Positions 7,747 to 47,066 of a stretch of 64,000 bases of DNA are shown here, one piece after another. How positions within the stretch are numbered: the stretch's first letter is position 1; each line of letters opens with the position of its first letter. The translations under genes were made by a program, and so were the position numbers. The notes under the pieces are model-generated. The model did no database searches, was not told the origin of the DNA, and saw nothing but the letters and a program-made list of their open reading frames with translations. The stretch lies in the IMG/VR virus record IMGVR_UViG_3300032236_002285, positions 62,001 to 126,000 of that record; one strand, given 5' to 3'.

Positions 7747-7915
7747 GCATTATAAAGGTGGTACTTATGAAGTAATTACTTTAGCCACTCATACAGAAAC
7801 AGGGGAAAAGTTAGTAGTCTATAAGTCTATTAACTTTGGCTCTATTTATGTTAGACCTTTGGATATCTGGAATTCAACATCAGAAGATGGACAAAAAAGA
7901 TTTGAACTTATATGA
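7715..7915 (+). CDS. DUF1653-family protein
   Basis: RYKHYKGGTYEVITLATHTETGEKLVVYKS...YVRP...RFE. Confidence 0.85.
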   Translation: MVYPLPRQRYKHYKGGTYEVITLATHTETGEKLVVYKSINFGSIYVRPLDIWNSTSEDGQKRFELI

Positions 7916-8661
7916 GTAATATAGTTGATTTATTTAATAATAACTCTAAAGAGTTTATTGTCACCCAGCGTTGGATGGTTGAAAATAAAAACCTTACCAA
8001 CTTTGAGACTAGGAAGTTCTCAGTTCCGGTTTTAACATCAGAAATGAAAAATGAATATCTTAACATGGATATGACACCTCATCTAATTAGTGTTATTAAA
8101 AAAGAAATTAGTCAAGATGTAAATAACTTATTTAATAAAAAATTATTTACTACTAATAAGTTTGATTATTTAGATTTAAGACCTGATGGTTCTTTAATGA
8201 CAGGTAGATTATATCTTGAGAAATTGGTGAGTTTGATACTTAGTAATAATTACAAGAATTTAATTACTACTATACTTATATCTTCAGAGTTACAAGATAG
8301 TGCTTTTTTTTCGTCTTATATGACAACACATGACTTAAAGACTAGTGGTTTGCTTGAGTGTTATGGTAAATTGGGTAGTGTTGAAGTTTATGTCGACCCA
8401 TATATGAGGTATAATGATGGAAGAATATGTTTATTCAATGAAGTTGAGTTCAATATAGGCGAAATGAAGGCTTATGAGACTACACAAATTGGCTCCTTGG
8501 TTCCTAGAATTATTATAGAATATGATATTGATTATAATGTGGGAGATTCAAAATTAATCTTTGTTATTGAGAATGAAAAATCTGAGGCATATATGCAGTA
8601 TAAATCTCTACAAAGAGATATAAAAATTGACAACATTTTAGATGGCGGCACTACTTCCTAA
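7912..8661 (+). CDS. Degenerate major-capsid-derived protein
   Basis: GKLGSVEVYVDPYMRYNDGRICL vs capsid GSIGDISIYVDPYQRYNDNRIVL; ends RDIKIDNILD. Confidence 0.75.
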   Translation: MSNIVDLFNNNSKEFIVTQRWMVENKNLTNFETRKFSVPVLTSEMKNEYLNMDMTPHLISVIKKEISQDVNNLFNKKLFTTNKFDYLDLRPDGSLMTGRLYLEKLVSLILSNNYKNLITTILISSELQDSAFFSSYMTTHDLKTSGLLECYGKLGSVEVYVDPYMRYNDGRICLFNEVEFNIGEMKAYETTQIGSLVPRIIIEYDIDYNVGDSKLIFVIENEKSEAYMQYKSLQRDIKIDNILDGGTTS

Positions 8662-8863
8662 TACATTTCAAGTTACTAATCCAGGAGGATCAAACGCAAT
8701 GACTGTTGATCCGGATGGTAATACAGTTATAAATAAACTGGTTCTTTTAGATGAGAAAACTGGTAATAAATGGCAAGTTAAAATATCAGATGGTGAATTG
8801 GTCGTAGAACCACTAGAATTAGAAGATAAAAGAGAATTTAAATTAAATGAAATACTAAAATGA
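8642..8863 (+). CDS. Hypothetical protein with C-terminal REFKLNEIL motif
   Basis: ORF overlapping both neighbours. Confidence 0.65.
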   Translation: MAALLPNTFQVTNPGGSNAMTVDPDGNTVINKLVLLDEKTGNKWQVKISDGELVVEPLELEDKREFKLNEILK

Positions 8864-9408
8864 AAAAGTACAAAGTTTCTATATATGGATATGGAGCAGA
8901 AGTAACAATTGGCTCTGTAACTGAAGAACAAAAATTACTACTAACTAATCCTGATAAAGAATTGGTTGATTGTGTTCTTGAAGATTTAGAAGATTGGGGT
9001 GGATGGTATGAGATTGATAATCAGTACCATCGTTGGGGAGCCGCTGGTAATTTTACTATTCTTATTGAAGATGAAGAAGGTAAGATTTTGTATAAAATTG
9101 ATTCTGAGAATATTCATCAATTTGATACAGATGATTTTGAATTAGTTGACTATGAGTGTATTGAAGTTGATGAATCTCAAGACTTATTAATGTGTGTTGC
9201 TTATGAAAAAGGTTCTTTCTTTGAAGGTGATATTGAAACTGATGATTTTAATATTTCTAAATTGAGAATTAGAATTGACGGTGAGATTGGAATTGATGAG
9301 TGTTACTATGGTGATATGGTTCGTGGTGTTTACTATGATGATGAAGAAGTAGATAACTATGGTGGTAGCACCGATGGTAAATCATTTGAAGTTTATAAGA
9401 ACTTTTAA
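8860..9408 (+). CDS. Hypothetical acidic protein
   Basis: ATGA overlap with upstream gene; followed by terminator. Confidence 0.7.
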   Translation: MKKYKVSIYGYGAEVTIGSVTEEQKLLLTNPDKELVDCVLEDLEDWGGWYEIDNQYHRWGAAGNFTILIEDEEGKILYKIDSENIHQFDTDDFELVDYECIEVDESQDLLMCVAYEKGSFFEGDIETDDFNISKLRIRIDGEIGIDECYYGDMVRGVYYDDEEVDNYGGSTDGKSFEVYKNF

Positions 9409-9412
9409 AAAG

Positions 9413-9442
9413 AAAAAACCTCAGAGAAATCTGAGGTTTTTT
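9413..9442. terminator. Bidirectional terminator
   Basis: aaaaaacctcaga-gaaa-tctgaggtttttt between convergent genes. Confidence 0.85.
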
Positions 9443-9456
9443 AATTTATTAATATT

Positions 9457-9897
9457 TTACATCCAACCACCTTGTTGATTACCATGTGGATTTATTTCTT
9501 GACCATCCACCATTAAGTGAATTTCACCACCAATATTTTTTAGAGCGTTTTGTATAGCTTTAACAGCATATCCTTTTACAAGACCTTCTCCCTCAATTGA
9601 GATGTTACAAATACCTGGTGAGCCACCAAATTCTTCGTTAGTACCTTCTAACTCTTCAATTGCGTCAATTTTATCTTCAATCTCAGCTGGACTTAAATCG
9701 TCCATTTTATGAGTTACTTTATTGTACTTATATCTTGAATTAGCAAAATTCTTTTGATGCTCATCAGAATTTGGCTTGTTTTGTCTGTCCATTTTCTTCA
9801 ATTCTTCTTTTTCAGCATTAGGATTAGCCAAGAAGTCCTTGAAGTTAACCACTTTTCTATTTACATTGAAAGTTGGTTGGTTATCTTTATAGGTCAT
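9457..9897 (-). CDS. Hypothetical protein
   Basis: 146-aa ORF; TAATATATA upstream on the minus strand. Confidence 0.7.
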   Translation of the reverse strand: MTYKDNQPTFNVNRKVVNFKDFLANPNAEKEELKKMDRQNKPNSDEHQKNFANSRYKYNKVTHKMDDLSPAEIEDKIDAIEELEGTNEEFGGSPGICNISIEGEGLVKGYAVKAIQNALKNIGGEIHLMVDGQEINPHGNQQGGWM

Positions 9898-9979
9898 TTT
9901 ATAGAATTACTTTTTTGTATATATTAATTATCAAATCTCATTTATTTTATTTCAGAGACTCGGTTTTTTATATATAACT

Positions 9980-11347
9980 ATGATAGAAAACAAAAATCAA
10001 AAAATAGTGTATAATAAAGACATGAGTAAATTAGTAACATTAAACGGAAATAATGACCAAGAACTATTAAGTTCAATTTTCGACAATGAAATTGTTGTAT
10101 TTGAAGATATTCAAGGGTCAAAGATATGGGTAAATTGGAACGGTAAGGAATTTATTATTAAGCCAAAATCTACAAATAATGACCCAATTAATCTTATTGA
10201 TATGGCTATTCAAAATTATTACAATCCGGGTATTAAATACTTAGAGTCTTTAGATACAAGAGTTAAGTCATTATTGAATAAAAAATGGTGGTTTTGTTTT
10301 GAGTACTTTCCAGATGAGCAACCAGCTAATATTGAATATTCAAAAGTTCCTAAGAATCATTTAGTTTTAACAGCTATTAATAAAGGTGGTAAATACGACT
10401 TTAGTATTGAAGAGTTGGATGAGTATGCTAGATTGTTTGATGTTGATATGTTACCTATAGTTTTTCAAGGTAAGTTAAATGAAAGAATGATTGAAGCTAT
10501 TAAGTACTTTATTAATACAAGTGAAGATGATTTAGAGTATGTATTTGGTGAAAAGTCATTTTCTTTTTTCTTCTATAAGATATTAAATCCAAGTTCTACA
10601 AATTCTTTTTTAATGGATGATGAGAATTATCAGTCAAATTTAGAAAAGTTAATTGTTAGAACTAAAAAAGGTGATATTTCATTTGAAATATTAAATCCTT
10701 TATATAAAAGATTGAGTGATAATAACTCAACTGATTTTGTTGAAATTTATACATTGATATTAGTTAACTTCTTAAATTTCTGTCAGTCATTTAACTTAGA
10801 TGAGATTAAGTTAAAAGGTGAAAAAAGAGACGAGGTTTATATTTACCTAATGTCTAAGTTATTCAATGTTTATGTATCTGAAGTAAAACAAGATTTATTG
10901 GATTTTGACTTTGTGGTTCCTGAATTTTTTGATAAAGAAAAATTCAAAATCAATACAGAATTAATTCCTAATAAATTAACTAAAGACTACATTAAAGAGT
11001 CTGACAAGTTAGAATATATTTTTAAAGTTGTTCTTGGTTCATTTAACAAGAAAAGAAAAAAAGCCATTGGTGTATTTACTGATAATACCGTTATTTTATT
11101 TAATACGTTTGTTAATGATATTAACACTTATATTGAAAAGTATTTAAATAAAGTTCATGAGGTTGAGCTAACAAGAGCAGGTCTTTTAGATTTTGGTGAT
11201 TTCTTTGAAATTCAATATGACCAAGATTCAGAAGGTGATGTTTATCCAGATGTTTATTCTGAATTTGAAAAAGGCGCACCAGAGCAAAAGAAAAAAGGTA
11301 AAGGCGGTAAAGGCTTGCCTGTACCAGAAAGTCCATCTAAAAAGTAA
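9980..11347 (+). CDS. RNA-ligase (Rnl2)-like fold protein, catalytic Lys apparently replaced
   Basis: VFEDIQGSKI at the KxDGS motif-I position; FCFEY; LPIVFQG. Confidence 0.45.
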   Translation: MIENKNQKIVYNKDMSKLVTLNGNNDQELLSSIFDNEIVVFEDIQGSKIWVNWNGKEFIIKPKSTNNDPINLIDMAIQNYYNPGIKYLESLDTRVKSLLNKKWWFCFEYFPDEQPANIEYSKVPKNHLVLTAINKGGKYDFSIEELDEYARLFDVDMLPIVFQGKLNERMIEAIKYFINTSEDDLEYVFGEKSFSFFFYKILNPSSTNSFLMDDENYQSNLEKLIVRTKKGDISFEILNPLYKRLSDNNSTDFVEIYTLILVNFLNFCQSFNLDEIKLKGEKRDEVYIYLMSKLFNVYVSEVKQDLLDFDFVVPEFFDKEKFKINTELIPNKLTKDYIKESDKLEYIFKVVLGSFNKKRKKAIGVFTDNTVILFNTFVNDINTYIEKYLNKVHEVELTRAGLLDFGDFFEIQYDQDSEGDVYPDVYSEFEKGAPEQKKKGKGGKGLPVPESPSKK

Positions 11348-11547
11348 TGAAGTCTATTGATCTTAATATAAACTCTGTTGAAGTTAAAACCAGTGTAAAA
11401 TCTATTAAATCTACTTGGACTCAACAGCTAGCTTTTGATTTAGAATCATTCCATGGTGTTGATATGAATGAGTTTGAAAGAGTTTTTATTAGGGAAAAAA
11501 GAAAAAATGATAGAAAAAAATCTATCAATAAAATCTTCCAAAATTAA
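11347..11547 (+). CDS. Mini-protein derived from a gp23 spine-helix segment
   Basis: VKTSVKSIKSTWTQQLAFDLESFHGVD resembles the T4-type gp23 segment AKSRxLKAxW/YxxELAQDLxAxHGxD. Confidence 0.65.
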   Translation: MKSIDLNINSVEVKTSVKSIKSTWTQQLAFDLESFHGVDMNEFERVFIREKRKNDRKKSINKIFQN

Positions 11548-11548
11548 G

Positions 11549-11574
11549 AAACATACACTTTAATTTTCATATAA
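11549..11574 (+). promoter_or_regulatory. AAAC-N16-ATATAA candidate promoter
   Basis: Same motif and spacing at 15094(-), 19229, 20061, 25283 and 28487. Confidence 0.55.
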
Positions 11575-11579
11575 TTTGT

Positions 11580-12815
11580 ATGACGGTTTCAAGTGTAATT
11601 AAGTTAAGTGATATAGAATCATATTCATCAATCAAGAAGAATTTAGAAGGTAAAAAGTGTAGTTTACAATTTCTTCCAATTTCGTTAGAAACAATTTCCA
11701 AACAAAAGAATTTTACTTATAAAGGCCAAAAGCTGAAGTCAGCTTATTTAATTGATATTATTCATAATTTAATACTAAAGTATTATTTTAAGAAGGATAA
11801 TAAATTTCACTTAATGTCTCCTATTCTAAAGGAGAAGTATGGCTACTTATATAACTATTATATGGACTTCCTTATAGATAATGGCGTTCTTGTTTTATTA
11901 TCAAAGCATCAAAAAGGCAAAAGCTCAAGAGTATATGCTATTAGTGAATATATTCTAAGAGGAAGTATTATACGATTCAATAATAGTGATAAAGTCTTAT
12001 TAAAGAAATATAAGGCAAAAGTATCTCAGATTGAAGAAGATAAAATGGAAAATTCCTTAATAGATAATGATATCAAGATTAAATTAGTTAATGACTTATT
12101 TAAGGTCCAAGTTCAATTTGACCGTTCTATATTTTACTTAGATTCATTAAAAGGTGATGATGTTGATATCTATAATAGAAATAGATATTCAGTAGAATGT
12201 ATTAACGACAAACACATATTTTATCACTTTGATAGTTATGGTCGTATGCACACTAACTTTACCATCTTAAAATCATTTATTAGAAAGAATTGTTTATTGA
12301 TTAATGGTGAAGAAACCGCAGAAATTGATATTAAAAACTCTCAACCACTTTTCTTAACTAAGTTAATACAAGATTCTGGGTCTAAATGGGTTCATAAAGA
12401 CGAGTTTGAGTTGTTCAAAAGTCTTACAATAAATGGTACTTATTATAATTACATAATGGATCATCTTGGTACAAAAGATAGAGGTATGGTAAAAGAATTA
12501 ACTTATAAAGTTCTTTTTGGTAGAAATGGTGTTAATAGTAAAGCTGATAAGATTTTTAGTAGTTTATTTCCTACAATACATTATTTTATTAAACTTTATA
12601 AGAAAGAACATGGTGATTATAAAGTGCTAGCTTATGAGTTACAAAAGTCTGAAAGCAATCTTGTTTTCAATAAAATAATTAGACAAGTAATGACACTTTA
12701 TCCAGAAATAAATTTAGTTACCGTTCATGATAGTATAATCATGCAAAAGTCTTACAGGGATTCGGTTTGGGCTATATTTCAGACTAAACTTTATGAAGAA
12801 TTTGGGCTTATTTAA
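11580..12815 (+). CDS. Family-A polymerase-like palm protein without exonuclease domain
   Basis: YGRMHT, EIDIKNSQP (motif A), RGMVKELTYKVLFG (motif B), LQKSES, TVHDSI (motif C). Confidence 0.6.
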   Translation: MTVSSVIKLSDIESYSSIKKNLEGKKCSLQFLPISLETISKQKNFTYKGQKLKSAYLIDIIHNLILKYYFKKDNKFHLMSPILKEKYGYLYNYYMDFLIDNGVLVLLSKHQKGKSSRVYAISEYILRGSIIRFNNSDKVLLKKYKAKVSQIEEDKMENSLIDNDIKIKLVNDLFKVQVQFDRSIFYLDSLKGDDVDIYNRNRYSVECINDKHIFYHFDSYGRMHTNFTILKSFIRKNCLLINGEETAEIDIKNSQPLFLTKLIQDSGSKWVHKDEFELFKSLTINGTYYNYIMDHLGTKDRGMVKELTYKVLFGRNGVNSKADKIFSSLFPTIHYFIKLYKKEHGDYKVLAYELQKSESNLVFNKIIRQVMTLYPEINLVTVHDSIIMQKSYRDSVWAIFQTKLYEEFGLI

Positions 12816-12840
12816 GTATTAAAAAATTATATATAGTTAT

Positions 12841-13002
12841 ATGGAATTCAAACAATATCATTTAAAATCTAAATCAGCAAAAGAAACATTTGCTAAATAT
12901 ATGGCATCTAGTTTAGAAAGTGCTATTGAATATTTCTCAAGATTAAAAAGATTGCCTGTCCAGGATTTACTTGAAATCTATATTGTTACAGATCAAGTAT
13001 AA
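12841..13002 (+). CDS. Small hypothetical protein (53 aa, not in the ORF track)
   Basis: MEFKQYHLKS...IVTDQV; TTATATATA just upstream; fills the intergenic gap. Confidence 0.6.
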   Translation: MEFKQYHLKSKSAKETFAKYMASSLESAIEYFSRLKRLPVQDLLEIYIVTDQV

Positions 13003-13020
13003 TATTTTAATATATACTTT

Positions 13021-13560
13021 ATGATCGGATTAGAACACAAAGATGCTTCTTTTATTTTACTTTCTTCCACAAGGCTTGAAGATATGATTTCAATTCTTTA
13101 TGCTAAAGAATATCAAATTATCCCTATAAAGGGTTATTATAAAGGTCAATACGAGGATTCTGTTATGGGTTATGGTCGTGTTGATAATGATACTCTAAGA
13201 AATGATGTTCTTTTCCTATTAAACCACTTTCATGAAGAGTGCGCTATCATTAAATATAATGGTGAAACTAACGCTAAAAAGATATTCAGAGATGGCTCTG
13301 AAAAACCAATGGGTATTGTGATGTATAATACAGATGCTGATAACATGTCTTATTTATATAATGGTACATCATTTTCTTTTGTTGAGTCAAAAAGATATTG
13401 GAAACCAACTAAGAAAGAAGATTTCAGAGTTGGTATGTTAGTTGAGTATTTTAATAATAATAAGTGGTATGAAAAGCTTGTTGAAAATCCTAGTGATGAA
13501 TATGAAAAGCTTTATAAGTTACTTATAAAGTATGATAAAGTTAGAGTAGCTTCTAGATAA
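13021..13560 (+). CDS. Hypothetical protein
   Basis: TAATATATA-cttt-ATG start. Confidence 0.7.
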   Translation: MIGLEHKDASFILLSSTRLEDMISILYAKEYQIIPIKGYYKGQYEDSVMGYGRVDNDTLRNDVLFLLNHFHEECAIIKYNGETNAKKIFRDGSEKPMGIVMYNTDADNMSYLYNGTSFSFVESKRYWKPTKKEDFRVGMLVEYFNNNKWYEKLVENPSDEYEKLYKLLIKYDKVRVASR

Positions 13561-14329
13561 TTTCAAACCAATTTATACACTTTTCAAAATTTGGTGTTTC
13601 TTTTAAGAAATATCTCATGTCATTTGGACAATTTATTACATTTAATCCATTATCAGTTTTCTGAACATTTCTCATCATAATAATCTTATTTGATTTAATA
13701 TAAGGAGAAGGTATAACATTCATACCGTTAATATTTCCAGTTACAACACCGTCATTACTAGAAACCATCATTACATAAGACATAAGAAGATATTTATAAG
13801 CATCTAAACCAACTATAATAGTATTAGCTAACCCCATTCTACTTGTAGAAGCTATTAAATTACTAATCATTGATATTCTTGTCATAATTCTTTTAGATTT
13901 AGACATTTCATTTTCATAATCAGTTAGATTTCCATCTTTTATATAACTAATATTTAGATTTTGTGGAATATTCATAGGATTTGATGTTAATAATTCTAAA
14001 GTATTCATAACATCTGTATAAATATCTGTTAAATCTAAATATGTTTTACCTTGTACATTAATAGAATTAACCTTAGGTGATATAGTTGACATATATCCTT
14101 CATTGTCTAATGAGTTTAAAAACGGTTCTCTATTCTTAAACTCTTCTACTTTACCATCTACAATAGCATCAATAGCAAGTTCTCTATTCTTTCTTTTTAA
14201 CTCTCTTTGATACTCTTCATTTGGAGTTTCTTCAAAATCAATATACATCATCAATGTTTGAGGTTGTGATGGTTTTGTAGATTCTACATAGTTACAGATT
14301 TTTTCTAAATCTTTAGATGAAATTATCAT
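13553..14329 (-). CDS. Degenerate major-capsid-derived protein
   Basis: KRIMTRISMISNLIASTSRMGLANTIIV vs capsid RKLITKIAHASNYIATEGRVGPAQYLIT; GNINGMNVIPSPY vs GSIGDISIYVDPY. Confidence 0.7.
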   Translation of the reverse strand: MIISSKDLEKICNYVESTKPSQPQTLMMYIDFEETPNEEYQRELKRKNRELAIDAIVDGKVEEFKNREPFLNSLDNEGYMSTISPKVNSINVQGKTYLDLTDIYTDVMNTLELLTSNPMNIPQNLNISYIKDGNLTDYENEMSKSKRIMTRISMISNLIASTSRMGLANTIIVGLDAYKYLLMSYVMMVSSNDGVVTGNINGMNVIPSPYIKSNKIIMMRNVQKTDNGLNVINCPNDMRYFLKETPNFEKCINWFEII

Positions 14330-15074: not shown

Positions 15075-15188
15075 TATGAATATTATTTTTTATTTATATC
15101 AAATACTCTTCTTTTGTTTACTATCAATTTTTATTGATTTGGTAACTTTTTTATTTTTTTAATATACAATTAACATTAAATGTAATTA

Positions 15189-15590
15189 ATGGATAAAAAA
15201 GTAGGAAGAACTGAAAGTATTTCTTTTCCAGAACTAAATATAAAAAGCGTTAATGCTAAGATTGACACGGGTGCTTATGGTGTTGTAATGCATGTGGATA
15301 ATGTGGAATTAATTGATGATAAGTTGCACTTTTCAATTAATTCTAATACATTTGTATATGATAAATTTAAAACCATATCTGTTAAAAACTCTTTTGGTAA
15401 AGTTCAAAATAGATTTTCAATTTTGACTAAAATAGTAATTGGTGATTCAATATATAATTTTTATGTATCTTTAACCAATAGAAAAAAGATGAGATATCCT
15501 GTTTTAATAGGTCGAAGATTTCTTTATAAATTCAACTATTTAGTTGATGTAACAAAAAAGAATATAAATGATAGAAGTAAAGAGGTGTAA
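15189..15590 (+). CDS. Retropepsin-like protease (RimK-associated / Zn_protease family)
   Basis: AKIDTGA, VSLTNRKKMRYPVLIGRRFL. Confidence 0.85.
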   Translation: MDKKVGRTESISFPELNIKSVNAKIDTGAYGVVMHVDNVELIDDKLHFSINSNTFVYDKFKTISVKNSFGKVQNRFSILTKIVIGDSIYNFYVSLTNRKKMRYPVLIGRRFLYKFNYLVDVTKKNINDRSKEV

Positions 15591-16083
15591 TTATATAACT
15601 GGTAATCCTTCAGATGTTTCTTATGCAGTCAAAAAAATAGTTGACTTTTTAGAAATTGAAGGTAGAAACCCTCTTTTGCTTTATAAACCCTCTGAATCCA
15701 ATATCAAGTACTTCTTGTCTACAAAAATAGAATTTAATAATCTTAACCAGTTTATAGAAGTTATACATGATAAAAGTAAGCTTTTCAGAGTAGATTTACT
15801 TATTTTTGATTTCTGGCATTTAAGTGTTTCATCTATTATTGAGTATAAGTCACACATAGACAATTTAGGTATTGACTATATAATACTCGCTAAAGAATAT
15901 CATTATAAATCATCTGATGATGTTAATGATTTTCATGTTAAGTCTGAAAGAAAAGAAAGTTTTTCTAATGAATATTGGATAACTGATAAAATATCTGGAT
16001 GGACCTCTGATCTTTCTGGTCTTACAAAATCCTACATTCGTAATAAAAAAATTGATGATATCTTTAATAAAGATTCTGAATAA
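15568..16083 (+). CDS. Hypothetical protein with C-terminal RNKKIDDIF motif
   Basis: ORF in operon. Confidence 0.7.
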   Translation: MIEVKRCNYITGNPSDVSYAVKKIVDFLEIEGRNPLLLYKPSESNIKYFLSTKIEFNNLNQFIEVIHDKSKLFRVDLLIFDFWHLSVSSIIEYKSHIDNLGIDYIILAKEYHYKSSDDVNDFHVKSERKESFSNEYWITDKISGWTSDLSGLTKSYIRNKKIDDIFNKDSE

Positions 16084-16115
16084 TTTGTATATTGTTAATA
16101 AATTATTTATATTTG
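16084..16115 (+). promoter_or_regulatory. Bacteroidota sigma-70-type promoter
   Basis: TTTG-N20-TATATTTG. Confidence 0.7.
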
Positions 16116-16142
16116 TATAAATAGTAATATAATAGCAATATA

Positions 16143-17237
16143 ATGAGAATTAGACGCAAGTTTTTACAACTTACAAGATATACTTATCCTTATGGTACAG
16201 AAGGATTTCTAAAGTCATATCTACCCGAAGGTACTAAAAAAGATGCCTATGGTAACTACTATCACCTGGTAGGAGAAAATCCAACAACTATGTTTACTTG
16301 TCACTTAGATACCGCTTGTTCAAAGCAGGTTAAAGTGAATCATGTCTTAGTAGGAAATACAATTAAAACTGATGGTAAAAGCATTTTAGGTGCTGATGAT
16401 AAAGCCGGTATGGTTGTTGTTCTTAACATGATTGAAAATAAAGTTCCAGGGCTTTACTATTTCTTTATAGGTGAAGAAGTTGGTTGTATTGGCTCTGGTA
16501 AATTAGCAGAGAATTGGGCTAATATTAAATTTAGTAATACTATTTCCAAAGTTGTTTCTTTTGACAGACGAAGTGATTGTTCTGTTATTACACATCAATT
16601 TTATGGTCGTTGTTGCTCTGATGAATTTGCTGAAGAGCTTTCTTTTAGATTAAATTCAACTGGTCAAAGATTAAATTTAGAACCAGATGATACAGGCGTT
16701 TTAACTGACTCGGCTCAGTTTATGGAGATTGTACCAGAGTGTACAAATATTTCTGTTGGTTATATGTATGAGCATACTACAAATGAGTGCCAAGATATTG
16801 ATTATCTTCAAAGATTATGTAAGGCTGTTTGTTTAATTGACTGGGAATCTTTACCAGTTGAAAGAGATCATACAGAAGAAGAATATGATTATGATTACTA
16901 TGATGAAGATGATTATGAATATGAGGAGGTTAAGTTTGTTGAGGATTTCTACTCATATTTTTTGGTGAATGGTAAAACTAAAAAGATGTATATATCAAGT
17001 GATGTGATTGCAAAAGAACATGATATAATTTTTAATTGGTTACAAGCTTATGGCTATTCTGAATTAGAAAGTATTGACTGGAATGGTAACTCGTTACATG
17101 TTAAAACTAGTAATGGTGCTCAAGAGTTTGTTGGAAATAGAGTTGAACTTATGGAGATGATTTCTGAACTAAGTTCAGTTCCTATGAGTAAGATTAAAGA
17201 GAATTTAAATAATGATAAGTCGGAATTAGTACTTTAA
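16143..17237 (+). CDS. M20/M28-family Zn peptidase-like protein (paralog 2)
   Basis: FTCHLDT, LGADDKAG, GEEVGCIGS, SFDRR, TDS, HT. Confidence 0.8.
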   Translation: MRIRRKFLQLTRYTYPYGTEGFLKSYLPEGTKKDAYGNYYHLVGENPTTMFTCHLDTACSKQVKVNHVLVGNTIKTDGKSILGADDKAGMVVVLNMIENKVPGLYYFFIGEEVGCIGSGKLAENWANIKFSNTISKVVSFDRRSDCSVITHQFYGRCCSDEFAEELSFRLNSTGQRLNLEPDDTGVLTDSAQFMEIVPECTNISVGYMYEHTTNECQDIDYLQRLCKAVCLIDWESLPVERDHTEEEYDYDYYDEDDYEYEEVKFVEDFYSYFLVNGKTKKMYISSDVIAKEHDIIFNWLQAYGYSELESIDWNGNSLHVKTSNGAQEFVGNRVELMEMISELSSVPMSKIKENLNNDKSELVL

Positions 17238-17238
17238 T

Positions 17239-22858: not shown

Positions 22859-24385
22859 ATGTTAATTGAAACACAATATTTAACAAATAGTAAGAAATTA
22901 GTAGTTAGTTACGTTGATAAAAGTGGTGATATAAAGCTTAAATATTATAATTGGGACAATCCAATGAAATATGTTGCTTGTGAAGACAGCGATCCACTTA
23001 GACACCCTGAGTTTAAATCTTGGGATGGTAAACACGTTAAGCAAGTAGAAGTAAATCAACCTGATAGATATGCTATCTATGAATTTTTAGATGGCTTGCC
23101 TGAATCAGAAAAAAATGAAATCTTTGAATTTAATCTTCCTAAGATTTACTTTATAGATATTGAAACTGAAATCGTTGATGGTTTCCCTGAAGCAGCTGAT
23201 GTTAAAGATGTTAATGGTAATGTAACTAAAGAAGGTGCTTCAACACAAGTTCTTTCTATCTCTATTGTTTATGATGATAAAATCATTCTTCTTGGTTTGA
23301 AAGAAATGCCAGAGGAAATGCAAGATAGAATTATCACTAATACTAATAAATACTTTGAAAAGTTTGGCACTGAGTATAAATTCAAATATATCAAATATGA
23401 TGATGAATTTGATATGTTGTATGCTTTCTTTTATAAGATGATTCCTAAGATGCCTATCTTAACTGGTTGGAACTTCTTAAAATATGACTGGTTATATTTA
23501 GTAAATCGTTCAAGAAAAATTTCAAAATGGGCTAATGGTAAAGAATATAAAATTGACCCAGCTGTTTCTTCTTTAACAAAAAGAATGAACAAGATTTGGT
23601 CAACTGAATTTGAAGTACCGGCACATCGAATGATTTTTGACTATATGCAGTTGTATGAAATCTGTGATACTTCTATTAAAGTAAAAGAATCATCATCATT
23701 AGACTTCGTTGCTAATAAACTGGTGGGTGTTGAAAAGATTAAGTATAATGGATCTTTACAGAAATTATATGAAGATGACTTTGAAACATTTATGTACTAT
23801 AACGCTGTCGATAGTGTACTTGTTCAAAAAATACATGATGCTCGTAACTATATCTCAATCATTTACGCGATTTCATCATTAGCTCAAATCAGAATTATTG
23901 ACGTTGTTTCTCAGATGAATAATGCGTTAGGTTCTTTGGCTATTACAGAAGGTGTTTTAAGAAATAGATTCCGTAAGATGGATAACATTGTTCTTTTCCG
24001 AGATGAGAAAGGAGATGCTGAATCTACAATTGCTGGTGGTTGGGTTAAGGATCCTGTAGTTGGTATGAATCAGTGGTGTGTGACCTATGACTTTGCGTCA
24101 CTTTATCCAACAACTCAAAGACAATTTTACATTGCACCAGAAACATTTGTTGGTCTTCAAGATGAAAAAGATAAATCTAAGTGTACAAATGGTAGACCAA
24201 TTGATTTAACTAAGCACGTTCTTTGTGTGAATGGTGTTGTATTTGAAAAGAGAAAATCGCCTACTTTGCTTATGCTCGAAGATGTTTATGCTGATAGAAA
24301 GAAAGCTAAGAAAGTGATGATGGATAAGAAAGAAGATTTGAAAAAAATAATGGATGAGATTAAACAATTAGAAGCAGAAATATAA
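22859..24385 (+). CDS. DNA polymerase family B, N-terminal subunit (exonuclease plus motif A); split gene
   Basis: FIDIETE, GWNFLKYD, YNAVDS exonuclease motifs; GGWV and YDFASLYP; ends in the fingers with no KxxxNSxYG or YxDTDS. Confidence 0.9.
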   Translation: MLIETQYLTNSKKLVVSYVDKSGDIKLKYYNWDNPMKYVACEDSDPLRHPEFKSWDGKHVKQVEVNQPDRYAIYEFLDGLPESEKNEIFEFNLPKIYFIDIETEIVDGFPEAADVKDVNGNVTKEGASTQVLSISIVYDDKIILLGLKEMPEEMQDRIITNTNKYFEKFGTEYKFKYIKYDDEFDMLYAFFYKMIPKMPILTGWNFLKYDWLYLVNRSRKISKWANGKEYKIDPAVSSLTKRMNKIWSTEFEVPAHRMIFDYMQLYEICDTSIKVKESSSLDFVANKLVGVEKIKYNGSLQKLYEDDFETFMYYNAVDSVLVQKIHDARNYISIIYAISSLAQIRIIDVVSQMNNALGSLAITEGVLRNRFRKMDNIVLFRDEKGDAESTIAGGWVKDPVVGMNQWCVTYDFASLYPTTQRQFYIAPETFVGLQDEKDKSKCTNGRPIDLTKHVLCVNGVVFEKRKSPTLLMLEDVYADRKKAKKVMMDKKEDLKKIMDEIKQLEAEI

Positions 24386-34756: not shown

Positions 34757-34764
34757 ATAATTAT

Positions 34765-34841: not shown

Positions 34842-36293
34842 ATGTCAAAATTTAACACAACAATGCCAAAGGCAAAGACTTTAACTGAAAACTTAGCAGG
34901 TGGACAAGCTTATTCACAATCTGATGAATTGGCTTTGGTATCACTATTATTAACATCATTTGTTAATGACCAGTTTTATAGAAATGCTCAAACATCATTA
35001 GATGAGTTGAGAAGACTTTCTGCTAAAGTGAAAGATAAAGAGTTTGTTGCTAAGGCGGCTATCTTTGCTCGTGACCGTTTCGGTATGAGAAGTATTACTC
35101 ATGCTCTTGCTGGTGAATTAACTTCACAACTATCGGGTGCTGAGTGGGGTAAAAACTTCTACGACAAAGTAGTTGTTCGTGTTGATGATATGACTGAAAT
35201 CATGTCATACTACTTAGCTTATAAGACTTCTAAAGATAGTCCTAAGTTTCCAAACGCCTTGAAGAAAGGTTTTGCTAAGGCTTTTGATAAGTTTGATGGT
35301 TACCAATTAGCTAAGTACAAAGGTGACAACAAAGAAGTGAAACTTGTTGACTTGGTTAACATTGTTCACCCAGTTCCTACCTTTAGAAACAAAGCGGCTC
35401 TTGAGTCACTTGTTAAAGGTGAGTTGAAAAACACACAAACTTGGGAATCTATGTTGTCTCAAGCTGGTCAAGTAGCTGAGTCTGAAGAAGACTTGACTAA
35501 ATTGAAGTCTGATGCTTGGTCTGAATTGATTTCTACTAAGAAGATTGGTTACTTTGCGCTTCTTAGAAACTTGAGAAACATTATCACTCAAGCCCCAACA
35601 GCTGTTAAATCAGCTTGTGAAATGTTAGTTGATGAAAAGTTGATTAAGAACTCAAGAGTTCTTCCATTCCGTTTCTCAACTGCTTATGAAGAAATCAGTA
35701 AGATTGGTTCTTCTAAAGAAGTAAGAGATGTTCTTATGGCAATTAACCAAGCGCTTGATATTTCTGTTGCTAACGTACCAGTATTTGACGGTGAAACACT
35801 TGTTGTTATGGACGTCTCTGGTTCTATGAGTGGTAGACCATCTGAGATTGCGTCATTGTTTGGTGCTATCTTGGCTAAAGTTAATAACTGTGATGTTATG
35901 ACTTTCTCTACTGATGCTAAGTATATGTCTTATAATCCAATGGATTCTGTAATGACTATTAGAAATAGCTTCAGATTCTCTGGTGGTGGAACAAACTTCC
36001 GTTCTATCTTCCAGAAGGCTAACAAGAAGTATGACAGAGTTATTATCTTGTCAGACATGCAAGGTTGGGTGGGTTATACTAGTCCATCTGCGGACTTTTC
36101 TCAGTATAAAAAGAAATACAGTGCTAACCCATTTGTATATTCTTGGGATCTTGCTGGTTACTCTACACTTCAATTCCCAGAACAAAATGTCTTTGCTTTG
36201 GCTGGATTCAGTGATAAGGTTTTTCAAATAATGTCTCTTCTTGAAGAAGATAAACAAGCATTATTGAATGAAGTCAGAAGCATAAAAATATAA
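34842..36293 (+). CDS. rsr: Ro60/TROVE-domain ribonucleoprotein
   Basis: NLAGGQAY, LAKYK, HP, TWE, ALLRNLRNI, VLPFRF; vWA MIDAS DVSGSM, GGT, IILSD. Confidence 0.95.
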   Translation: MSKFNTTMPKAKTLTENLAGGQAYSQSDELALVSLLLTSFVNDQFYRNAQTSLDELRRLSAKVKDKEFVAKAAIFARDRFGMRSITHALAGELTSQLSGAEWGKNFYDKVVVRVDDMTEIMSYYLAYKTSKDSPKFPNALKKGFAKAFDKFDGYQLAKYKGDNKEVKLVDLVNIVHPVPTFRNKAALESLVKGELKNTQTWESMLSQAGQVAESEEDLTKLKSDAWSELISTKKIGYFALLRNLRNIITQAPTAVKSACEMLVDEKLIKNSRVLPFRFSTAYEEISKIGSSKEVRDVLMAINQALDISVANVPVFDGETLVVMDVSGSMSGRPSEIASLFGAILAKVNNCDVMTFSTDAKYMSYNPMDSVMTIRNSFRFSGGGTNFRSIFQKANKKYDRVIILSDMQGWVGYTSPSADFSQYKKKYSANPFVYSWDLAGYSTLQFPEQNVFALAGFSDKVFQIMSLLEEDKQALLNEVRSIKI

Positions 36294-39219: not shown

Positions 39220-39234
39220 AGTGTATATATTAAA

Positions 39235-40005: not shown

Positions 40006-40068
40006 ATTTTACTGGTTATTTTTTATTATATATTATTTTTATGAAGGTCATGTTGTCGAATATATACT

Positions 40069-40788: not shown

Positions 40789-40799
40789 AATATAAAATT

Positions 40800-41195: not shown

Positions 41196-41247
41196 TCCAA
41201 TAAATAGTCTTGTCTTTTTAATATATACAAAAAAAGATTACGACTAA

Positions 41248-42843: not shown

Positions 42844-42846
42844 GAT

Positions 42847-44346: not shown

Positions 44347-44364
44347 AAAATTTATATATACACT

Positions 44365-45504: not shown

Positions 45505-46190
45505 TCTTCTATTTTCTCAAACCACCAATTAAAGTAGATATAATTGTCACCGACTAGATTATAATAATCTGTTTCGTATTTAACAATTATTTTATTATCA
45601 TGTGCTCTAACTACTTCAATTTCGATTCCTTTTTCCATTTTTAATTGTTTACCAGTTTCTGTTGAATAACAATATAGTTCATCGTTTAGTAGTTTATACA
45701 TACCTGGTTCAGGTTTTAACCAAGTTTTTATTGTTTTAATAACAAGACCTTTTATTTTAATAACCCATTCTTTACTTTGATGTAGGTCAAAGTCTTTAAA
45801 AACTTCTGATGTAAATTCAGGATTAGCACTCATAATATTTTCAACAACGCCCCAATACTCTTCACCATCAATGATAAAAGTAATATAAACATCATAAAAA
45901 ATACTATTTGATTTAACTATTCTAAGAATTTTCATCTTTTGGATATCTTGATGCTCTAGTGCTAGTTTGCTTCTTAAATTTCTATAAGCATTTGTACCAG
46001 AAAGGTTATAAAGAATGTCATTAATTCTTGACATTGCTTGTCTAATACCATCAGCATATCTATCAAACGCGTTTGTAGACAAAGTAGGATCATTTACCTG
46101 ACCACCAATTGCACCAGCTGCTGAGTCCGGATTCATTCTTTGTAAATTAAATTCTGTGAATTCTAAGATAAGTTTATTCCTGCGTTTCAT
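45501..46190 (-). CDS. Hypothetical protein
   Basis: 229-aa ORF; divergent TATATATA region upstream. Confidence 0.7.
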   Translation of the reverse strand: MKRRNKLILEFTEFNLQRMNPDSAAGAIGGQVNDPTLSTNAFDRYADGIRQAMSRINDILYNLSGTNAYRNLRSKLALEHQDIQKMKILRIVKSNSIFYDVYITFIIDGEEYWGVVENIMSANPEFTSEVFKDFDLHQSKEWVIKIKGLVIKTIKTWLKPEPGMYKLLNDELYCYSTETGKQLKMEKGIEIEVVRAHDNKIIVKYETDYYNLVGDNYIYFNWWFEKIED

Positions 46191-46226
46191 AATTAAATAT
46201 ATATATTAAAATATCAAACTATTATT

Positions 46227-46544
46227 ATGAAAATTAGAAGATTTAATGAAGATGAACAAGTAGATATCTCATCTGAAAGAATTAGTGAAATAAATGACCA
46301 ATTAAAAGATTTTGCTGCTACTATGTTAGATAAGTCAAAATATGTTGAATCTCTTCTAAACGAACTTAATAACTATAAGAGTGATTCTACAAAGGGCAAT
46401 GACCAGATAGATGATTCTATTGCTGCTTTACAAGTTATTAAAAAAGACGTAGATGATTGTAATGATAAGATTGATACTGTTATTAATAATCTAACTGATT
46501 ATAATGATGGTGGAAGAAAATATATGTACACTGAAAACAAGTAG
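46227..46544 (+). CDS. Coiled-coil protein with CTS-like N-terminus
   Basis: MKIRRFNEDE; heptad pattern. Confidence 0.7.
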   Translation: MKIRRFNEDEQVDISSERISEINDQLKDFAATMLDKSKYVESLLNELNNYKSDSTKGNDQIDDSIAALQVIKKDVDDCNDKIDTVINNLTDYNDGGRKYMYTENK

Positions 46545-46565
46545 TTAGATTTTTAATATAAATTT

Positions 46566-46730
46566 ATGGCTATTTGGGAAAATATTCCTTTGATTAAAAG
46601 AGAATCTATAAAAAAATCTTTATATAGATTTGATAGAATACAAAGCAGGAAAAAGAAAATTATCAATTTGTTATGTCATTTGCAAGAGGTTGGGGTAAAG
46701 ACGGCTGGAAACACAGACAAGAAGATTTAA
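46566..46730 (+). CDS. Small protein (54 aa, not in the ORF track) with RKKKIINLL
   Basis: MAIWENIPLIK...TDKKI; TAATG coupling to the next small ORF. Confidence 0.5.
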   Translation: MAIWENIPLIKRESIKKSLYRFDRIQSRKKKIINLLCHLQEVGVKTAGNTDKKI

Positions 46731-46831
46731 TGAAGGAATCTTGGGAGATTTTCAGAATAACAAATAGAAAAAGAATAAGAAAATCTAAAATTAATAACAT
46801 ATTTAATGAAGTTAGGAAAGAAGTCAAGTGA
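46730..46831 (+). CDS. Small protein (33 aa) with RKSKINNIF
   Basis: MKESWEIFRITNRKRIRKSKINNIFNEVRKEVK. Confidence 0.45.
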   Translation: MKESWEIFRITNRKRIRKSKINNIFNEVRKEVK

Positions 46832-47066
46832 TTTAGAACCAGGTTATGTTTATGTTCCTTATATTCCAATAACAACATCACAAGTTATAGTTGGTTATGG
46901 TTCTAAAAACATAAATAGAAAAAGAAAGATTAATAAAATATTTGATTTAGGTTTAGATATTAAAGATGAATTCTCACCAAGTAAATCAATTATGAGTAGA
47001 TACTCAACAAAGAATATAAATAGTAAATATTACGGAACTATAGAAATAAAAAATCCCACTTTATAA
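46806..47066 (+). CDS. Mini-protein derived from the capsid C-terminal segment
   Basis: PGYVYVPY...FSPSKSIMSRYS...YYGTIEI vs capsid PGIIFVPY...FAPRMLLRSRYA...YMTIKV. Confidence 0.75.
   Translation: MKLGKKSSDLEPGYVYVPYIPITTSQVIVGYGSKNINRKRKINKIFDLGLDIKDEFSPSKSIMSRYSTKNINSKYYGTIEIKNPTL

What the first reader, a model, noticed from the sequence alone, without database searches (positions are those of the whole stretch)
7912..47066. Dispersed family of capsid-protein fragments that together cover the gp23 C-terminal half
Seen: four ORFs far from the capsid gene each resemble a different gp23 segment: 11347-11547 (near capsid aa ~310-350), 7912-8661 (~310-360 and ~480-500), 13553-14329 (~415-510) and 46806-47066 (~505-560). 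None is full length, all are intact ORFs, and each carries the R-x-x-K-I-x-x-I type motif that the real capsid lacks. Known: capsid-sensing defences exist (e.g. CapRel, Lit), and satellites or PICIs use capsid-interfering proteins. Inference: the fragments may be domesticated decoys, assembly modulators or competitor-exclusion factors rather than random debris.
Basis: partly seen in the sequence, partly recalled or inferred. Interest (0 to 1): 0.75.

Follow-up and report, generated by a model that had tools for sequence, protein, structure and literature searches.

The report
Mini capsid paralogs and tagged mimics
A 476-kb freshwater phage keeps, besides its T4-type capsid gene, two compact whole-fold capsid paralogs and several conserved micro-proteins that each copy one capsid segment; all carry a short helical tag found on about a tenth of its genes, and this arrangement has not been described before as far as I could find.

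Summary

- **The ORFs are real.** All four are intact and resemble the resident gp23-type capsid protein (115-1809) at about the stated segments.
- **Two are not fragments.** 7912-8661 and 13553-14329 (minus strand) model as complete, compact HK97 cores. They lack the insertion domain and the N-terminal region. Their best structural matches are T4 gp23 and gp24 (Z 12-18). Each belongs to a conserved family of over 100 clusters.
- **Two are true micro-proteins.** 11347-11547 and 46806-47066 each consist of one capsid segment plus the motif. They are intact in every relative examined. One holds its position even in a 642-kb phage where the paralogs are only about 35% identical.
- **At least three more lie outside the window.**
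- **The motif is a genome-wide tag.** R-x-x-K-I-x-x-I-L/F is conserved at protein level and sits mostly at the C-terminus. It occurs in about 60-80 of about 660 genes.
- **Other tagged micro-ORFs copy other phage proteins.** These include the terminase Walker A motif, polymerase B motif B and a tail-fibre N-terminus.

Random debris is excluded. The function is inferred only. My best guess is tag-addressed capsid-interface proteins acting in head assembly; an immune-decoy role is the main rival.

The parts
115..1809 (+). Major capsid protein, T4 gp23 type (564 aa): the parent of the family. It lacks the tag.
   Evidence: Pfam Gp23 E 4.5e-27. It sits after the portal and a protease-scaffold fusion in the genome. 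It did not score with the tag HMM.
7912..8661 (+). Compact whole HK97-fold paralog (249 aa) with a C-terminal tag helix. gp24-like by fold and by position.
   Evidence: BLASTP to MCP 441-498, E 7e-11. AF2 model pLDDT 84.8, pTM 0.81. 222 or more PDB hits at E<=0.001, all capsid or encapsulin shell proteins among the 50 listed. VIA Z 12.6 to T4 gp23 residues 105-521 and Z 11.5 to gp24 residues 2-422, over model residues 1-222. Family of 103 clusters.
8614..8640 (+). Tag in 7912-8661 (R235-L243, RDIKIDNIL), in a helix added after the HK97 core.
   Evidence: R235, D236, K238 and I239 are invariant in 30 homologs down to 34% identity. Helix 225-243 lies outside the VIA-aligned core of 1-222.
11347..11547 (+). 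Micro-protein (66 aa): copy of the capsid E-loop strand and spine helix (MCP 310-368) plus a C-terminal tag.
   Evidence: Pfam Gp23 1.1e-4; PHROG 138 at 1.4e-3. 22 further clusters of 66-70 aa, most with a PF07068 hit. Open in 9 IMG/VR relatives and in LR756502 at the same position. Its start overlaps the stop of the upstream gene.
11512..11538 (+). Tag in 11347-11547 (RKKSINKIF).
   Evidence: R56, K57, S59, I60, N61, K62, I63 and F64 are invariant in 22 sequences, while the rest is about 50% identical.
13553..14329 (-). Compact whole HK97-fold paralog (258 aa). The tag helix sits at the E-loop tip, where T4 gp23/gp24 carry the insertion domain. Candidate vertex or minor shell protein.
   Evidence: Pfam Gp23 4.3e-6, above the cut-off. 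AF2 pLDDT 89.8, pTM 0.81. VIA Z 17.8 to T4 gp23 residues 106-519 and Z 15.3 to gp24; the next unrelated HK97 folds score 12.8 or less. BFVD hit to a T4-like head vertex protein, TMq 0.54. 289 clusters and 114 representatives at 50% identity, nearly all full-length ones 220-280 aa. dN/dS 0.21. Syntenic in all relatives that cover the position.
14159..14185 (-). Tag in 13553-14329 (R49-V57, RELAIDAIV), internal.
   Evidence: R49 is one of only two invariant columns in 53 homologs. It lies in helix 38-57, between E-loop strands 24-35 and 82-96. hhalign pairs this strand-plus-helix module with the C-terminal module of the 7912-8661 family, E 6e-5.
46806..47066 (+). Micro-protein (86 aa): copy of the capsid C-terminal strands (MCP 498-558) with the tag inserted in a loop.
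   Evidence: BLASTP 3e-4; z 5.7. Open in 8 relatives at 74-87% identity. dN/dS 0.39 against 0.10-0.16 for its neighbours.
46917..46943 (+). Tag in 46806-47066 (RKRKINKIF), internal.
   Evidence: RKRKIN[KN]IF is kept in all 8 relatives.
46673..46831 (+). Tagged micro-ORF (52 aa, RKSKINNIF) overlapping the start of 46806-47066. Its parent protein was not identified.
   Evidence: Tag hits. tblastn relatives in L012-L014. No Pfam or PHROG match.
15568..16083 (+). Unrelated 171-aa protein with the same C-terminal tag (RNKKIDDIF). It shows the tag is not limited to capsid relatives.
   Evidence: Tag HMM score 18.2, 4 residues from the C-end. A 182-aa ORF ending in the same tag lies at the same place in LR756502; its homology was not tested.
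9980..11347 (+). Conserved 455-aa gene translationally coupled to the micro-ORF at 11347. RNA-ligase-like by language-model features only.
   Evidence: About 80-92% identical in relatives; dN/dS 0.07. Atlas feature neighbours are RNA_ligase / T4_Rnl2_C clusters at 0.94, which is a lead and not a test.

Best explanation
**Shown.** This huge phage has a T4-type head gene set: portal, protease-scaffold fusion and gp23-type capsid protein. From the capsid gene it has derived two kinds of extra protein.
1. Two compact proteins (258 and 249 aa) keep the whole HK97 core but have lost the insertion domain and the N-terminal region.
2. A set of 50-150-aa micro-proteins each keep one conserved capsid segment: N-arm, E-loop strand plus spine helix, A-domain helix, or C-terminal strands.

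All carry a 9-10-residue amphipathic helix with consensus R-[DEKN]-x-K-I-[NKD]-x-I-[LIF]. It sits at the C-terminus or in a surface loop. The same helix ends about 60-80 otherwise unrelated small proteins, roughly 10% of the genes.

**Inferred.**
- The helix is a portable address peptide that docks its carriers on one common partner.
- For the capsid-derived carriers I think the destination is the assembling head. The two compact paralogs would be minor shell proteins, with 13553-14329 the best vertex (gp24-like) candidate. The micro-proteins would be interface mimics that cap or bridge capsid-protein contact surfaces.
- The tag would then act like the C-terminal shell-binding peptides of scaffolding proteins and encapsulin cargo.
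For: **Whole-fold paralogs.**
- AF2 models have pLDDT 85 and 90.
- Among the listed PDB and BFVD rows, all named matches are capsid or encapsulin shell proteins or prohead protease-capsid fusions. T4 gp23 and gp24 stand on top, at Z 17.8/15.3 and 12.6/11.5 over the full core.

**Constraint.**
- The families are large and of constant length.
- dN/dS is 0.21-0.45.
- The ORFs are open in all relatives.
- The order Dam - paralog - ... - 455-aa gene - micro-ORF - 411-aa gene - 179-aa gene - paralog(-) - glycosyltransferase(-) is kept in LR756502, where the paralogs are about 35% identical.

**The tag is real and acts at protein level.**
- 43 regex hits against 4.2 in shuffles.
- 62 genes against 1 in the reversed control, with 50 within 8 residues of the C-end.
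- Synonymous codons vary freely for R, I, L, K and D.
- Tag residues are the invariant columns of each family.
- It is also frequent in LR756502 (9 ORFs in 40 kb) and absent from 40 kb of LR756500.

**Head link.**
- 7 Gp23-profile places in the genome come from one parent gene that is about 0.4% of the genome.
- The micro-protein at genome 165774-166214 copies the capsid N-terminal region (KKWAPVLE..., z 9.3). In T4 that region contacts the core and is cut off (my knowledge).
- The order capsid gene ... paralog ... RNA-ligase-like gene echoes T4's 23-24-rnlB (plus my knowledge of the T4 map).
- C-terminal shell-binding peptides are a general device in the HK97 lineage: P22 and phi29 scaffolds, HK97 protease, encapsulin cargo (my knowledge).
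Against: - No experiment and no virion proteome exists. No cultured relative is in GenBank; only two uncultured huge phages hold homologs.
- The immediate neighbours look like nucleic-acid enzymes (RNA-ligase-like, polymerase-palm-like, Dam, glycosyltransferase), not head genes.
- The protease-scaffold fusion does not end in the tag.
- Tagged micro-ORFs that copy the terminase Walker A motif, polymerase B motif B and a tail-fibre N-terminus are not explained by head assembly.
- The micro-proteins evolve 4-10 times faster than their neighbours at non-synonymous sites. That looks more like conflict than like a core assembly factor.
- 7912-8661 has no detectable homolog in the loci fetched from six of the nine relatives, and is found in only one.
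- Most tagged proteins are small and unannotated. They cluster in blocks of short genes that look like accessory regions.
Confidence: 0.35

Rival explanations
1. Immune decoys. The compact HK97 cores and the micro-proteins imitate the conserved parts of hallmark phage proteins (capsid, terminase, polymerase, tail fibre, sheath) that bacterial sensors recognise. They would soak up or mislead those sensors. The tag would give them a common fate, such as oligomerisation, delivery or turnover.
For: - Tagged micro-ORFs copy several different hallmark proteins, not only the capsid. The terminase-like one keeps RQTGKS and the polymerase-like one keeps K-x-I-x-NS-x-YG in orthologs at 56-75% identity. 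The tail-fibre-like one scores Pfam 3.6e-4 and PHROG 1.1e-4.
- The copies keep family-consensus residues rather than close identity to the resident capsid protein. 11347-11547 scores 1e-4 against the Pfam profile but has no BLASTP hit to its own capsid protein.
- Non-synonymous rates are raised: dN/dS 0.45-0.94 for 11347-11547 against 0.07 for its neighbours.
- Avs-type receptors are reported to sense capsid, terminase, portal, tail proteins and polymerases through conserved cores, leaving variable extensions unbound (PMC13581612). The compact paralogs have lost exactly the variable insertion domain.
Against: - Those receptors use extended interfaces on folded targets. Pieces of 40-60 residues are unlikely to present such surfaces.
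- A faithful mimic would be expected to trigger a sensor rather than block it.
- Positional conservation over deep divergence is unusual for counter-defence genes.
- My searches found no published case of fragment decoys.
Confidence: 0.25
2. The tag has nothing to do with the head. It could be a degron or adaptor-binding tail that times the removal of small proteins. It could be a weak MinD-like membrane-targeting helix. Or it could be a handle for a hub such as a clamp or the polymerase. The capsid-like carriers would then be only a few of many clients, and their own function stays open.
For: - Most carriers are small unannotated proteins, including zinc ribbons, with no capsid link.
- The basic version (R-K-E-K-I-K-R-L-F-G) looks like the E. 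coli MinD tail KKGFLKRLFGG. The R-x-K-K-I start looks like the MuA RRKKAI signal for ClpX (both from my knowledge).
- The position is overwhelmingly C-terminal.
Against: - R, K, I and I are fixed at set spacing. Membrane helices usually conserve only amphipathicity.
- Only three hydrophobic residues are present.
- The tag also works from internal loops in 13553-14329 and 46806-47066, which a free-C-terminus degron would not allow.
Confidence: 0.2
3. Competitor exclusion. The mimics are dominant-negative pieces that poison head assembly, packaging or replication of co-infecting T4-like phages, while the resident proteins are insensitive.
For: The copies resemble the T4-family consensus more than the resident protein. 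They evolve fast. Capsid-redirecting proteins of satellites set a precedent for interference with assembly (my knowledge).
Against: The resident capsid protein keeps the same consensus in the copied regions (alignment), so self-poisoning would be expected. A lone polymerase motif-B helix or Walker A loop is an unlikely poison. There is no satellite-like context.
Confidence: 0.1
4. Neutral leftovers of capsid-gene duplications that happen to remain open.
For: The pieces are small and similarity to the parent is weak. dN/dS of the micro-ORFs is higher than for their neighbours.
Against: - They are open in every relative, in a genome where I estimate about 8% of random codons are stops. That estimate is mine, from base composition, not from a tool.
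- Tag residues are invariant while the rest diverges.
- One keeps its position in a very distant genome.
- dN/dS is below 1.
- The two larger ones model confidently as whole folds.
Confidence: 0.03

Closest known systems
T4 gp24 head vertex protein (paralog of gp23; Pfam PF07068)
   Same: A second HK97-fold protein derived from the major capsid protein in a T4-type head gene set. 13553-14329 passes the Pfam cut-off. Both compact paralogs match gp24 and gp23 best. A T4-like vertex protein of about 300 aa is among the BFVD matches.
   Different: There are two paralogs instead of one. Both lack the insertion domain and any N-terminal propeptide. Both carry the tag helix. They lie 6 and 12 kb from the capsid gene among unrelated genes. 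Pentamer formation and a place in the shell are untested.
Capsid-targeting and cargo-loading peptides (encapsulin C-terminal cargo peptides; T4 N-terminal capsid targeting sequence; C-terminal shell-binding ends of P22/phi29 scaffolds and HK97 protease)
   Same: A short conserved terminal peptide is shared by otherwise unrelated proteins, in a system built on an HK97-fold shell.
   Different: About 60-80 carriers are spread over the whole genome. The sequence is unrelated to the known peptides. It is also used inside loops of HK97-fold proteins themselves. Binding to any shell or scaffold is not shown, and the resident scaffold-protease lacks the tag.
Short capsid epitopes and hallmark proteins as immune triggers (T4 Gol peptide with Lit; CapRel; Avs families)
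   Same: The copied parts are conserved segments of capsid, terminase, polymerase and tail proteins. These are the protein classes reported as triggers (PMC13581612). The micro-protein at genome 165774-166214 covers the region equivalent to the Gol segment (my knowledge of T4 gp23).
   Different: These are phage-encoded extra copies, not the triggers themselves. No link to any defence system is shown.
Capsid-remodelling proteins of satellites (P4 Sid, PLE TcaP, SaPI CpmB)
   Same: Small proteins that act on HK97 capsid assembly.
   Different: Those are not capsid-derived and sit on satellites. Here the proteins derive from the capsid gene and belong to the phage's own conserved gene order.
MinD/FtsA-type C-terminal membrane-targeting helix
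   Same: A C-terminal, basic, amphipathic stretch of about 10 residues. The K-I-K-R-L-F-G version is close to the MinD tail (my knowledge).
   Different: Specific residues and spacing are fixed, there are fewer hydrophobic positions, and the tag is also used internally.

Membership tests
T4 Gp23/Gp24 capsid family (PF07068) | Profile match above the curated cut-off (24.4 bits) | tested here: inconclusive
   Met by 13553-14329 (26.8 bits). Below the cut-off for 11347-11547 (22.2) and 46806-47066 (15.4). No hit for 7912-8661, which instead matches the resident capsid protein by BLASTP at 7e-11.
T4 Gp23/Gp24 capsid family (PF07068) | Complete HK97 core (E-loop, spine helix, P and A domains) | tested here: met
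   Met for 7912-8661 and 13553-14329. Models align to T4 gp23 residues ~105-521 and gp24 ~2-422 with 198-205 residues, Z 11.5-17.8. The two micro-proteins cover only 40-60 residues and cannot form the fold.
T4 Gp23/Gp24 capsid family (PF07068) | Insertion domain in the E-loop and a cleavable N-terminal region | tested here: not met
   Both compact paralogs start near the equivalent of gp23 residue ~105. Each has about 200 core residues aligned, against 370-520 in the T4 chains. In 13553-14329 the tag helix 38-57 occupies the insertion site.
T4 gp24 vertex protein | Forms pentamers at capsid vertices next to gp23 hexamers | not testable with these tools
   One co-folding job of capsid protein with 13553-14329 gave no answer. 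It needs cryo-EM or virion proteomics.
T4 gp24 vertex protein | Gene next to gene 23, followed by rnlB | tested here: inconclusive
   7912-8661 lies 6 kb after the capsid gene and 1.3 kb before an RNA-ligase-like gene (Atlas lead only). Inserted genes separate them. It was not detected in the loci of six relatives.
Terminal targeting peptide (encapsulin cargo peptide / capsid targeting sequence type) | Short conserved terminal peptide shared by unrelated proteins | tested here: met
   62 genes at HMM score 5 or more, 50 of them within 8 residues of the C-end, against 1 in the control. The carriers have unrelated N-terminal parts.
Terminal targeting peptide (encapsulin cargo peptide / capsid targeting sequence type) | Peptide binds the shell or scaffold and carriers are found inside particles | not testable with these tools
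   No proteome and no cultured relative exist.
Free-C-terminus degron (ClpX C-motif 2, MuA type) | Signal must sit at the extreme C-terminus | tested here: not met
   The distance to the C-end varies from 0 to 8 residues. The tag is internal in 13553-14329 (residues 49-57 of 258) and in 46806-47066 (38-46 of 86), and is conserved there.
Immune-trigger decoy | Binds or blocks a host sensor of the parent protein | not testable with these tools
   Only the resemblance to conserved segments of hallmark proteins is shown.

The most novel reading that the evidence does not exclude
The tag is the address label of a phage-encoded bait-and-tag system. About a tenth of the proteome carries one portable helix. 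A dedicated subset of micro-proteins presents conserved epitopes of hallmark phage proteins (capsid, terminase, polymerase, tail fibre, sheath), and the two insertion-less HK97 cores present the bare capsid fold. Together they would intercept host pattern-recognition receptors or competing phages, and the tag would decide what happens to whatever they catch.
Probability: 0.2. Interest if true: 0.9.

Novelty: new variant of a known kind. Interest (0 to 1): 0.72.

Why it matters
- **Head architecture.** If the compact paralogs are shell proteins, they show how very large T4-type heads diversify their capsid protein. One phage would hold three HK97 proteins, two of them stripped to the core.
- **Protein sorting.** If the tag is an address peptide, it would be a phage-wide sorting signal covering about 10% of the genes. 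Nothing like that is known for phages. It would give a direct handle (a tag-peptide pull-down) on the biology of uncultured huge phages.
- **Micro-proteins.** Micro-proteins that copy single conserved segments of hallmark proteins and stay under selection are a class that gene callers and annotators currently discard. If they turn out to be decoys or interface caps, that would add a new kind of player in phage assembly or phage-host conflict.

Tried and rejected
- **Other genetic code.** Not needed. Standard-code ORFs of at least 100 aa sum to 90.5% of the genome length and TAA dominates the stops.
- **DNA-level motif (promoter, terminator or repeat read as protein).** Rejected. Codons for R, I, L, K, D and F vary synonymously between copies.
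- **The tag as merely the end of the HK97 spine helix.** Partly rejected. In 11347-11547 it continues that helix, and the capsid protein has a weak cognate at 358-368. But genome 297490-297717 has both a spine-helix end and a separate tag, and most carriers have no capsid part.
- **Co-folding of capsid protein with 13553-14329.** No answer, neither for nor against.
- **BLASTP of tag-masked micro-ORFs against all large ORFs.** Found only the N-terminal capsid copy; too insensitive.
- **Pfam on 20 tagged proteins.**
  - The 10 C-terminally tagged proteins gave nothing useful.
  - The tag-like matches inside large enzymes such as topoisomerase are probably chance.
- **PHROGs on further micro-ORFs.** Only the tail-fibre lead.
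- **Second half of the family B polymerase.** Not found by Pfam six-frame search or motif patterns. 48770-49891 looked possible but is not a polymerase.
- **Transcription.** Lake metatranscriptome contigs from 80-90% identical relatives touch the 455-aa gene and 13553-14329. They cannot prove transcription, and 11347-11547 is too diverged to place.
- **Literature.** No description of such a tag or of fragment mimics was found.
- **Late-promoter test.** A TATATATA-like motif lies upstream of the capsid, portal, protease, terminase and 455-aa genes, but also upstream of ribonucleotide reductase. It gave no timing information.

Full report
**Setting.** The window is bases 62001-126000 of a single 476,236-bp record with 29.9% G+C. 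The standard code fits: ORFs of at least 100 aa sum to 90.5% of the genome length, and 313 of 374 long ORFs end in TAA. No other code was used. The only related records in GenBank phages are uncultured huge phages of 634, 642 and 462 kb. DNA runs that hold the sequence are lake and freshwater metagenomes. The head genes are of T4 type. In genome coordinates they are:
- portal at 54435-56162 (Pfam Portal_T4, 4e-60);
- a 720-aa protease-scaffold fusion at 59876-62038;
- the capsid gene at 62115-63809, which is window 115-1809 (Pfam Gp23, 4.5e-27).

**The observation.** All four ORFs exist and are open. 13553-14329 is on the minus strand. Their likeness to the capsid protein (MCP) is more than chance:

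| ORF | Evidence | MCP segment |
|---|---|---|
| 7912-8661 | BLASTP 7e-11, 41% identity; z 14.6 against shuffles | 441-498 |
| 11347-11547 | Pfam Gp23 1.1e-4; PHROG major head protein 1.4e-3; z 3.1; family profile E 0.0077 | 310-368 |
| 13553-14329 | Pfam Gp23 4.3e-6, above the curated cut-off; z 5.3 | 383-509 |
| 46806-47066 | BLASTP 3e-4; z 5.7 | 498-558 |

The exception is a first match of 7912-8661 near residue 310-360, which I did not find.

**Two are not fragments.** I built alignments of 30 and 53 homologs and modelled both larger proteins. The models have pLDDT 84.8 and 89.8, and pTM 0.81 for both.
- All solved-structure matches listed are capsid or encapsulin shell proteins.
- In the second-look alignment, 13553-14329 matches T4 gp23 residues 106-519 at Z 17.8 and gp24 at Z 15.3. 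Other HK97 folds start at 12.8.
- 7912-8661 matches gp23 residues 105-521 at Z 12.6 and gp24 residues 2-422 at Z 11.5, over model residues 1-222.

So both span the whole HK97 core. What they lack is the T4-type insertion domain and the N-terminal region. A T4-like head vertex protein of about 300 aa is among the viral-model matches. Both belong to large families of constant length. One has 103 clusters. The other has 289 clusters and 114 representatives at 50% identity, and nearly all its full-length members are 220-280 aa. No full-length capsid protein appears among them.

**Two are true micro-proteins, and they are maintained.**
- 11347-11547 has 22 further clusters of 66-70 aa, most with a precomputed Gp23 hit. 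It is open in nine related viral contigs.
- 46806-47066 is open in eight relatives at 74-87% identity.
- dN/dS is 0.45 for 11347-11547 (0.45-0.94 for pairs with the window) and 0.39 for 46806-47066. Adjacent genes give 0.07-0.16, 13553-14329 gives 0.21, and the capsid gene gives about 0.3. The micro-proteins are therefore constrained but fast.
- 11347-11547 is only 44-49% identical in genomes where both of its neighbours are mostly about 90% identical.
- Its position is nevertheless old. In the 642-kb phage LR756502 the paralogs are about 35% identical, yet the order is the same: Dam methylase, paralog, 446-aa gene, a 53-aa micro-ORF whose start overlaps the stop of that gene, 411-aa gene, 176-aa gene, second paralog and glycosyltransferase on the other strand, zinc protease, tagged protein, peptidase.

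**The family is larger than four.** A six-frame Gp23 search of the genome gives seven places. Outside the window, in genome coordinates, are:
- 165774-166214 (146 aa; MCP 8-107, z 9.3);
- 297490-297717 (75 aa; MCP 330-374; Pfam 6.9e-4);
- 338665-338835, minus strand (56 aa; MCP 414-454; Pfam 4.2e-5).

Together the pieces sample the N-arm, E-loop and spine helix, A-domain helix and C-terminal strands. That is the conserved core, not the variable insertion domain.

**The motif is a genome-wide tag.**
- The pattern R-x(3)-I-[DNEAK]-x-I-[FLIV] occurs 43 times in ORFs, against 4.2 +/- 2.0 in shuffled proteins.
- A profile built from it finds 62 of 661 greedily called genes at score 5 or more, against 1 in reversed sequences. 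Fifty of these lie within 8 residues of the C-end.
- A loose pattern is met in the last 18 residues of 84 genes, the first 18 of 4 and the middle 18 of 8.
- The consensus is R-[DEKN]-x-K-I-[NKD]-[KQN]-I-[LIF]-[KND]-end.
- Codons vary synonymously, so the constraint acts on the peptide.
- The tag residues are the invariant columns of all three families I aligned.
- The tag can be C-terminal (7912-8661, 11347-11547). It can sit at the E-loop tip, where T4 has the insertion domain (13553-14329, helix 38-57). Or it can sit in a loop (46806-47066).
- A profile comparison of the two paralog families finds their best match in a strand-plus-tag-helix module, not in the HK97 core.
- Carriers are mostly 70-170 aa and unannotated.
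- The tag is frequent in LR756502 and was not seen in 40 kb of LR756500.
- The capsid protein did not score with the tag profile.

**Other tagged micro-ORFs copy other hallmark proteins.** Coordinates are genome coordinates.
- 181969-182157 resembles the terminase region around Walker A, and its ortholog keeps RQTGKS.
- 127466-127636 carries a family B polymerase motif B, kept in two orthologs at 56-75% identity.
- 317295-317474 matches a tail-fibre N-terminal family (Pfam 3.6e-4, PHROG 1.1e-4).
- 166192-166392 begins like a sheath N-terminus; this rests on the motif alone.

These leads are weaker than the capsid ones but point the same way.

**What it most likely is.** The parts above are shown. 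The mechanism is inferred. The tag behaves like a portable address or docking helix. For the capsid-derived carriers I favour a role at the assembling head, for four reasons:
- They derive overwhelmingly from one head gene.
- One copies the capsid N-terminal region, which in T4 contacts the core.
- The two compact paralogs are gp24-like in fold.
- C-terminal shell-binding peptides are a recurrent device in the HK97 lineage (my knowledge).

I put this at about 0.35. The main rival, at 0.25, is that they are decoys for host sensors of hallmark proteins. That would also account for the terminase, polymerase and tail-fibre mimics and for the fast protein evolution. It fits the report that Avs receptors read conserved cores (PMC13581612). 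Against it, short pieces are poor mimics of folded surfaces, and the gene order is deeply conserved. A head-independent tag function (degron, membrane helix or hub handle) gets about 0.2, competitor exclusion 0.1 and neutral debris about 0.03.

**Limits.**
- There are no expression data worth the name, no proteome and no cultured relative.
- The single co-folding job gave no answer.
- The neighbours of the window ORFs look like nucleic-acid enzymes rather than head genes, which weakens the head reading.

**Novelty.** Extra HK97 paralogs are known (gp24). My searches found no description of three features:
- insertion-less compact paralogs carrying a shared tag;
- conserved micro-proteins that each copy one capsid segment;
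- a C-terminal tag on a tenth of a phage's genes.

Noticed in passing
window 22859-24385 (+): The family B DNA polymerase ORF (508 aa) has the exonuclease domain and motif A (DFASLYPT) but stops at profile position ~155 of 453, just before the finger helix with motif B. No large ORF with motif B or C was found anywhere in the genome. The only K-x(3)-NS-x-YG sits in a tagged 56-aa micro-ORF at genome 127466-127636. The polymerase is either split or a remnant.
   Followed up: partly
genome 59876-62038 (its last 38 bases are window 1-38): A prohead protease is fused to a 720-aa scaffold-like protein. It holds about 14 tandem copies of a 13-residue acidic repeat (YSEYLAENLDKNI) and then His/Glu/Asp-rich repeats. 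This could be a multivalent partner for a basic amphipathic tag. Not tested.
   Followed up: no
window 5937-6758 and 6760-7746 (+): A LAGLIDADG homing endonuclease and a Dam-type N6-adenine methyltransferase lie directly upstream of the compact paralog 7912-8661. LR756502 also has an ORF directly before its paralog whose C-terminus resembles the end of this methyltransferase.
   Followed up: partly
window 34842-36293 (+): A Ro60-like protein (TROVE domain 6.7e-18 plus vWA domain) is encoded by the phage. I did not look for a Y-RNA-like partner.
   Followed up: no
window 1890-2576 and 5313-5873 (+): An NFACT-R RNA-binding domain protein lies right after the capsid gene, and there is a NADAR domain protein. 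These are unusual companions for a head gene.
   Followed up: no
window 9980-11347 and 11580-12815 (+): Two very conserved genes (dN/dS 0.07) flank the micro-ORF. By language-model features only, they are RNA-ligase-like and polymerase A palm-like. The first ends in a Lys/Gly/Pro-rich tail, and its stop overlaps the micro-ORF start (TAATG).
   Followed up: partly
window 15189-15590, 15568-16083, 16143-17237 (+): A RimB-type zinc protease domain, a tagged 171-aa protein and an M28-like peptidase lie in a row. The same trio follows the second paralog in LR756502.
   Followed up: no
upstream of window 115, 9980, 46227 and of genome 54435, 59876, 38196: A TATATATA-like box lies 15-30 bases before the start of the capsid, portal, protease, terminase and some other genes. 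It resembles the T4 late promoter TATAAATA but is also seen before ribonucleotide reductase.
   Followed up: partly
genome 434186-434657 (-), 181803-182157 (+), 165774-166392 (+), window 46673-47066 (+): Tagged micro-ORFs tend to lie in tandem, two or three in a row, often overlapping by a few codons.
   Followed up: no
genome 421096-421608 (-): A 170-aa ORF has a Gly-rich stretch resembling capsid residues 52-131 (z 6.9). The match may be compositional.
   Followed up: no
whole record: IMG/VR classes this 476-kb, 97%-complete record as a provirus. I saw nothing host-like in the window, and no tRNA genes in the 64 kb.
   Followed up: no
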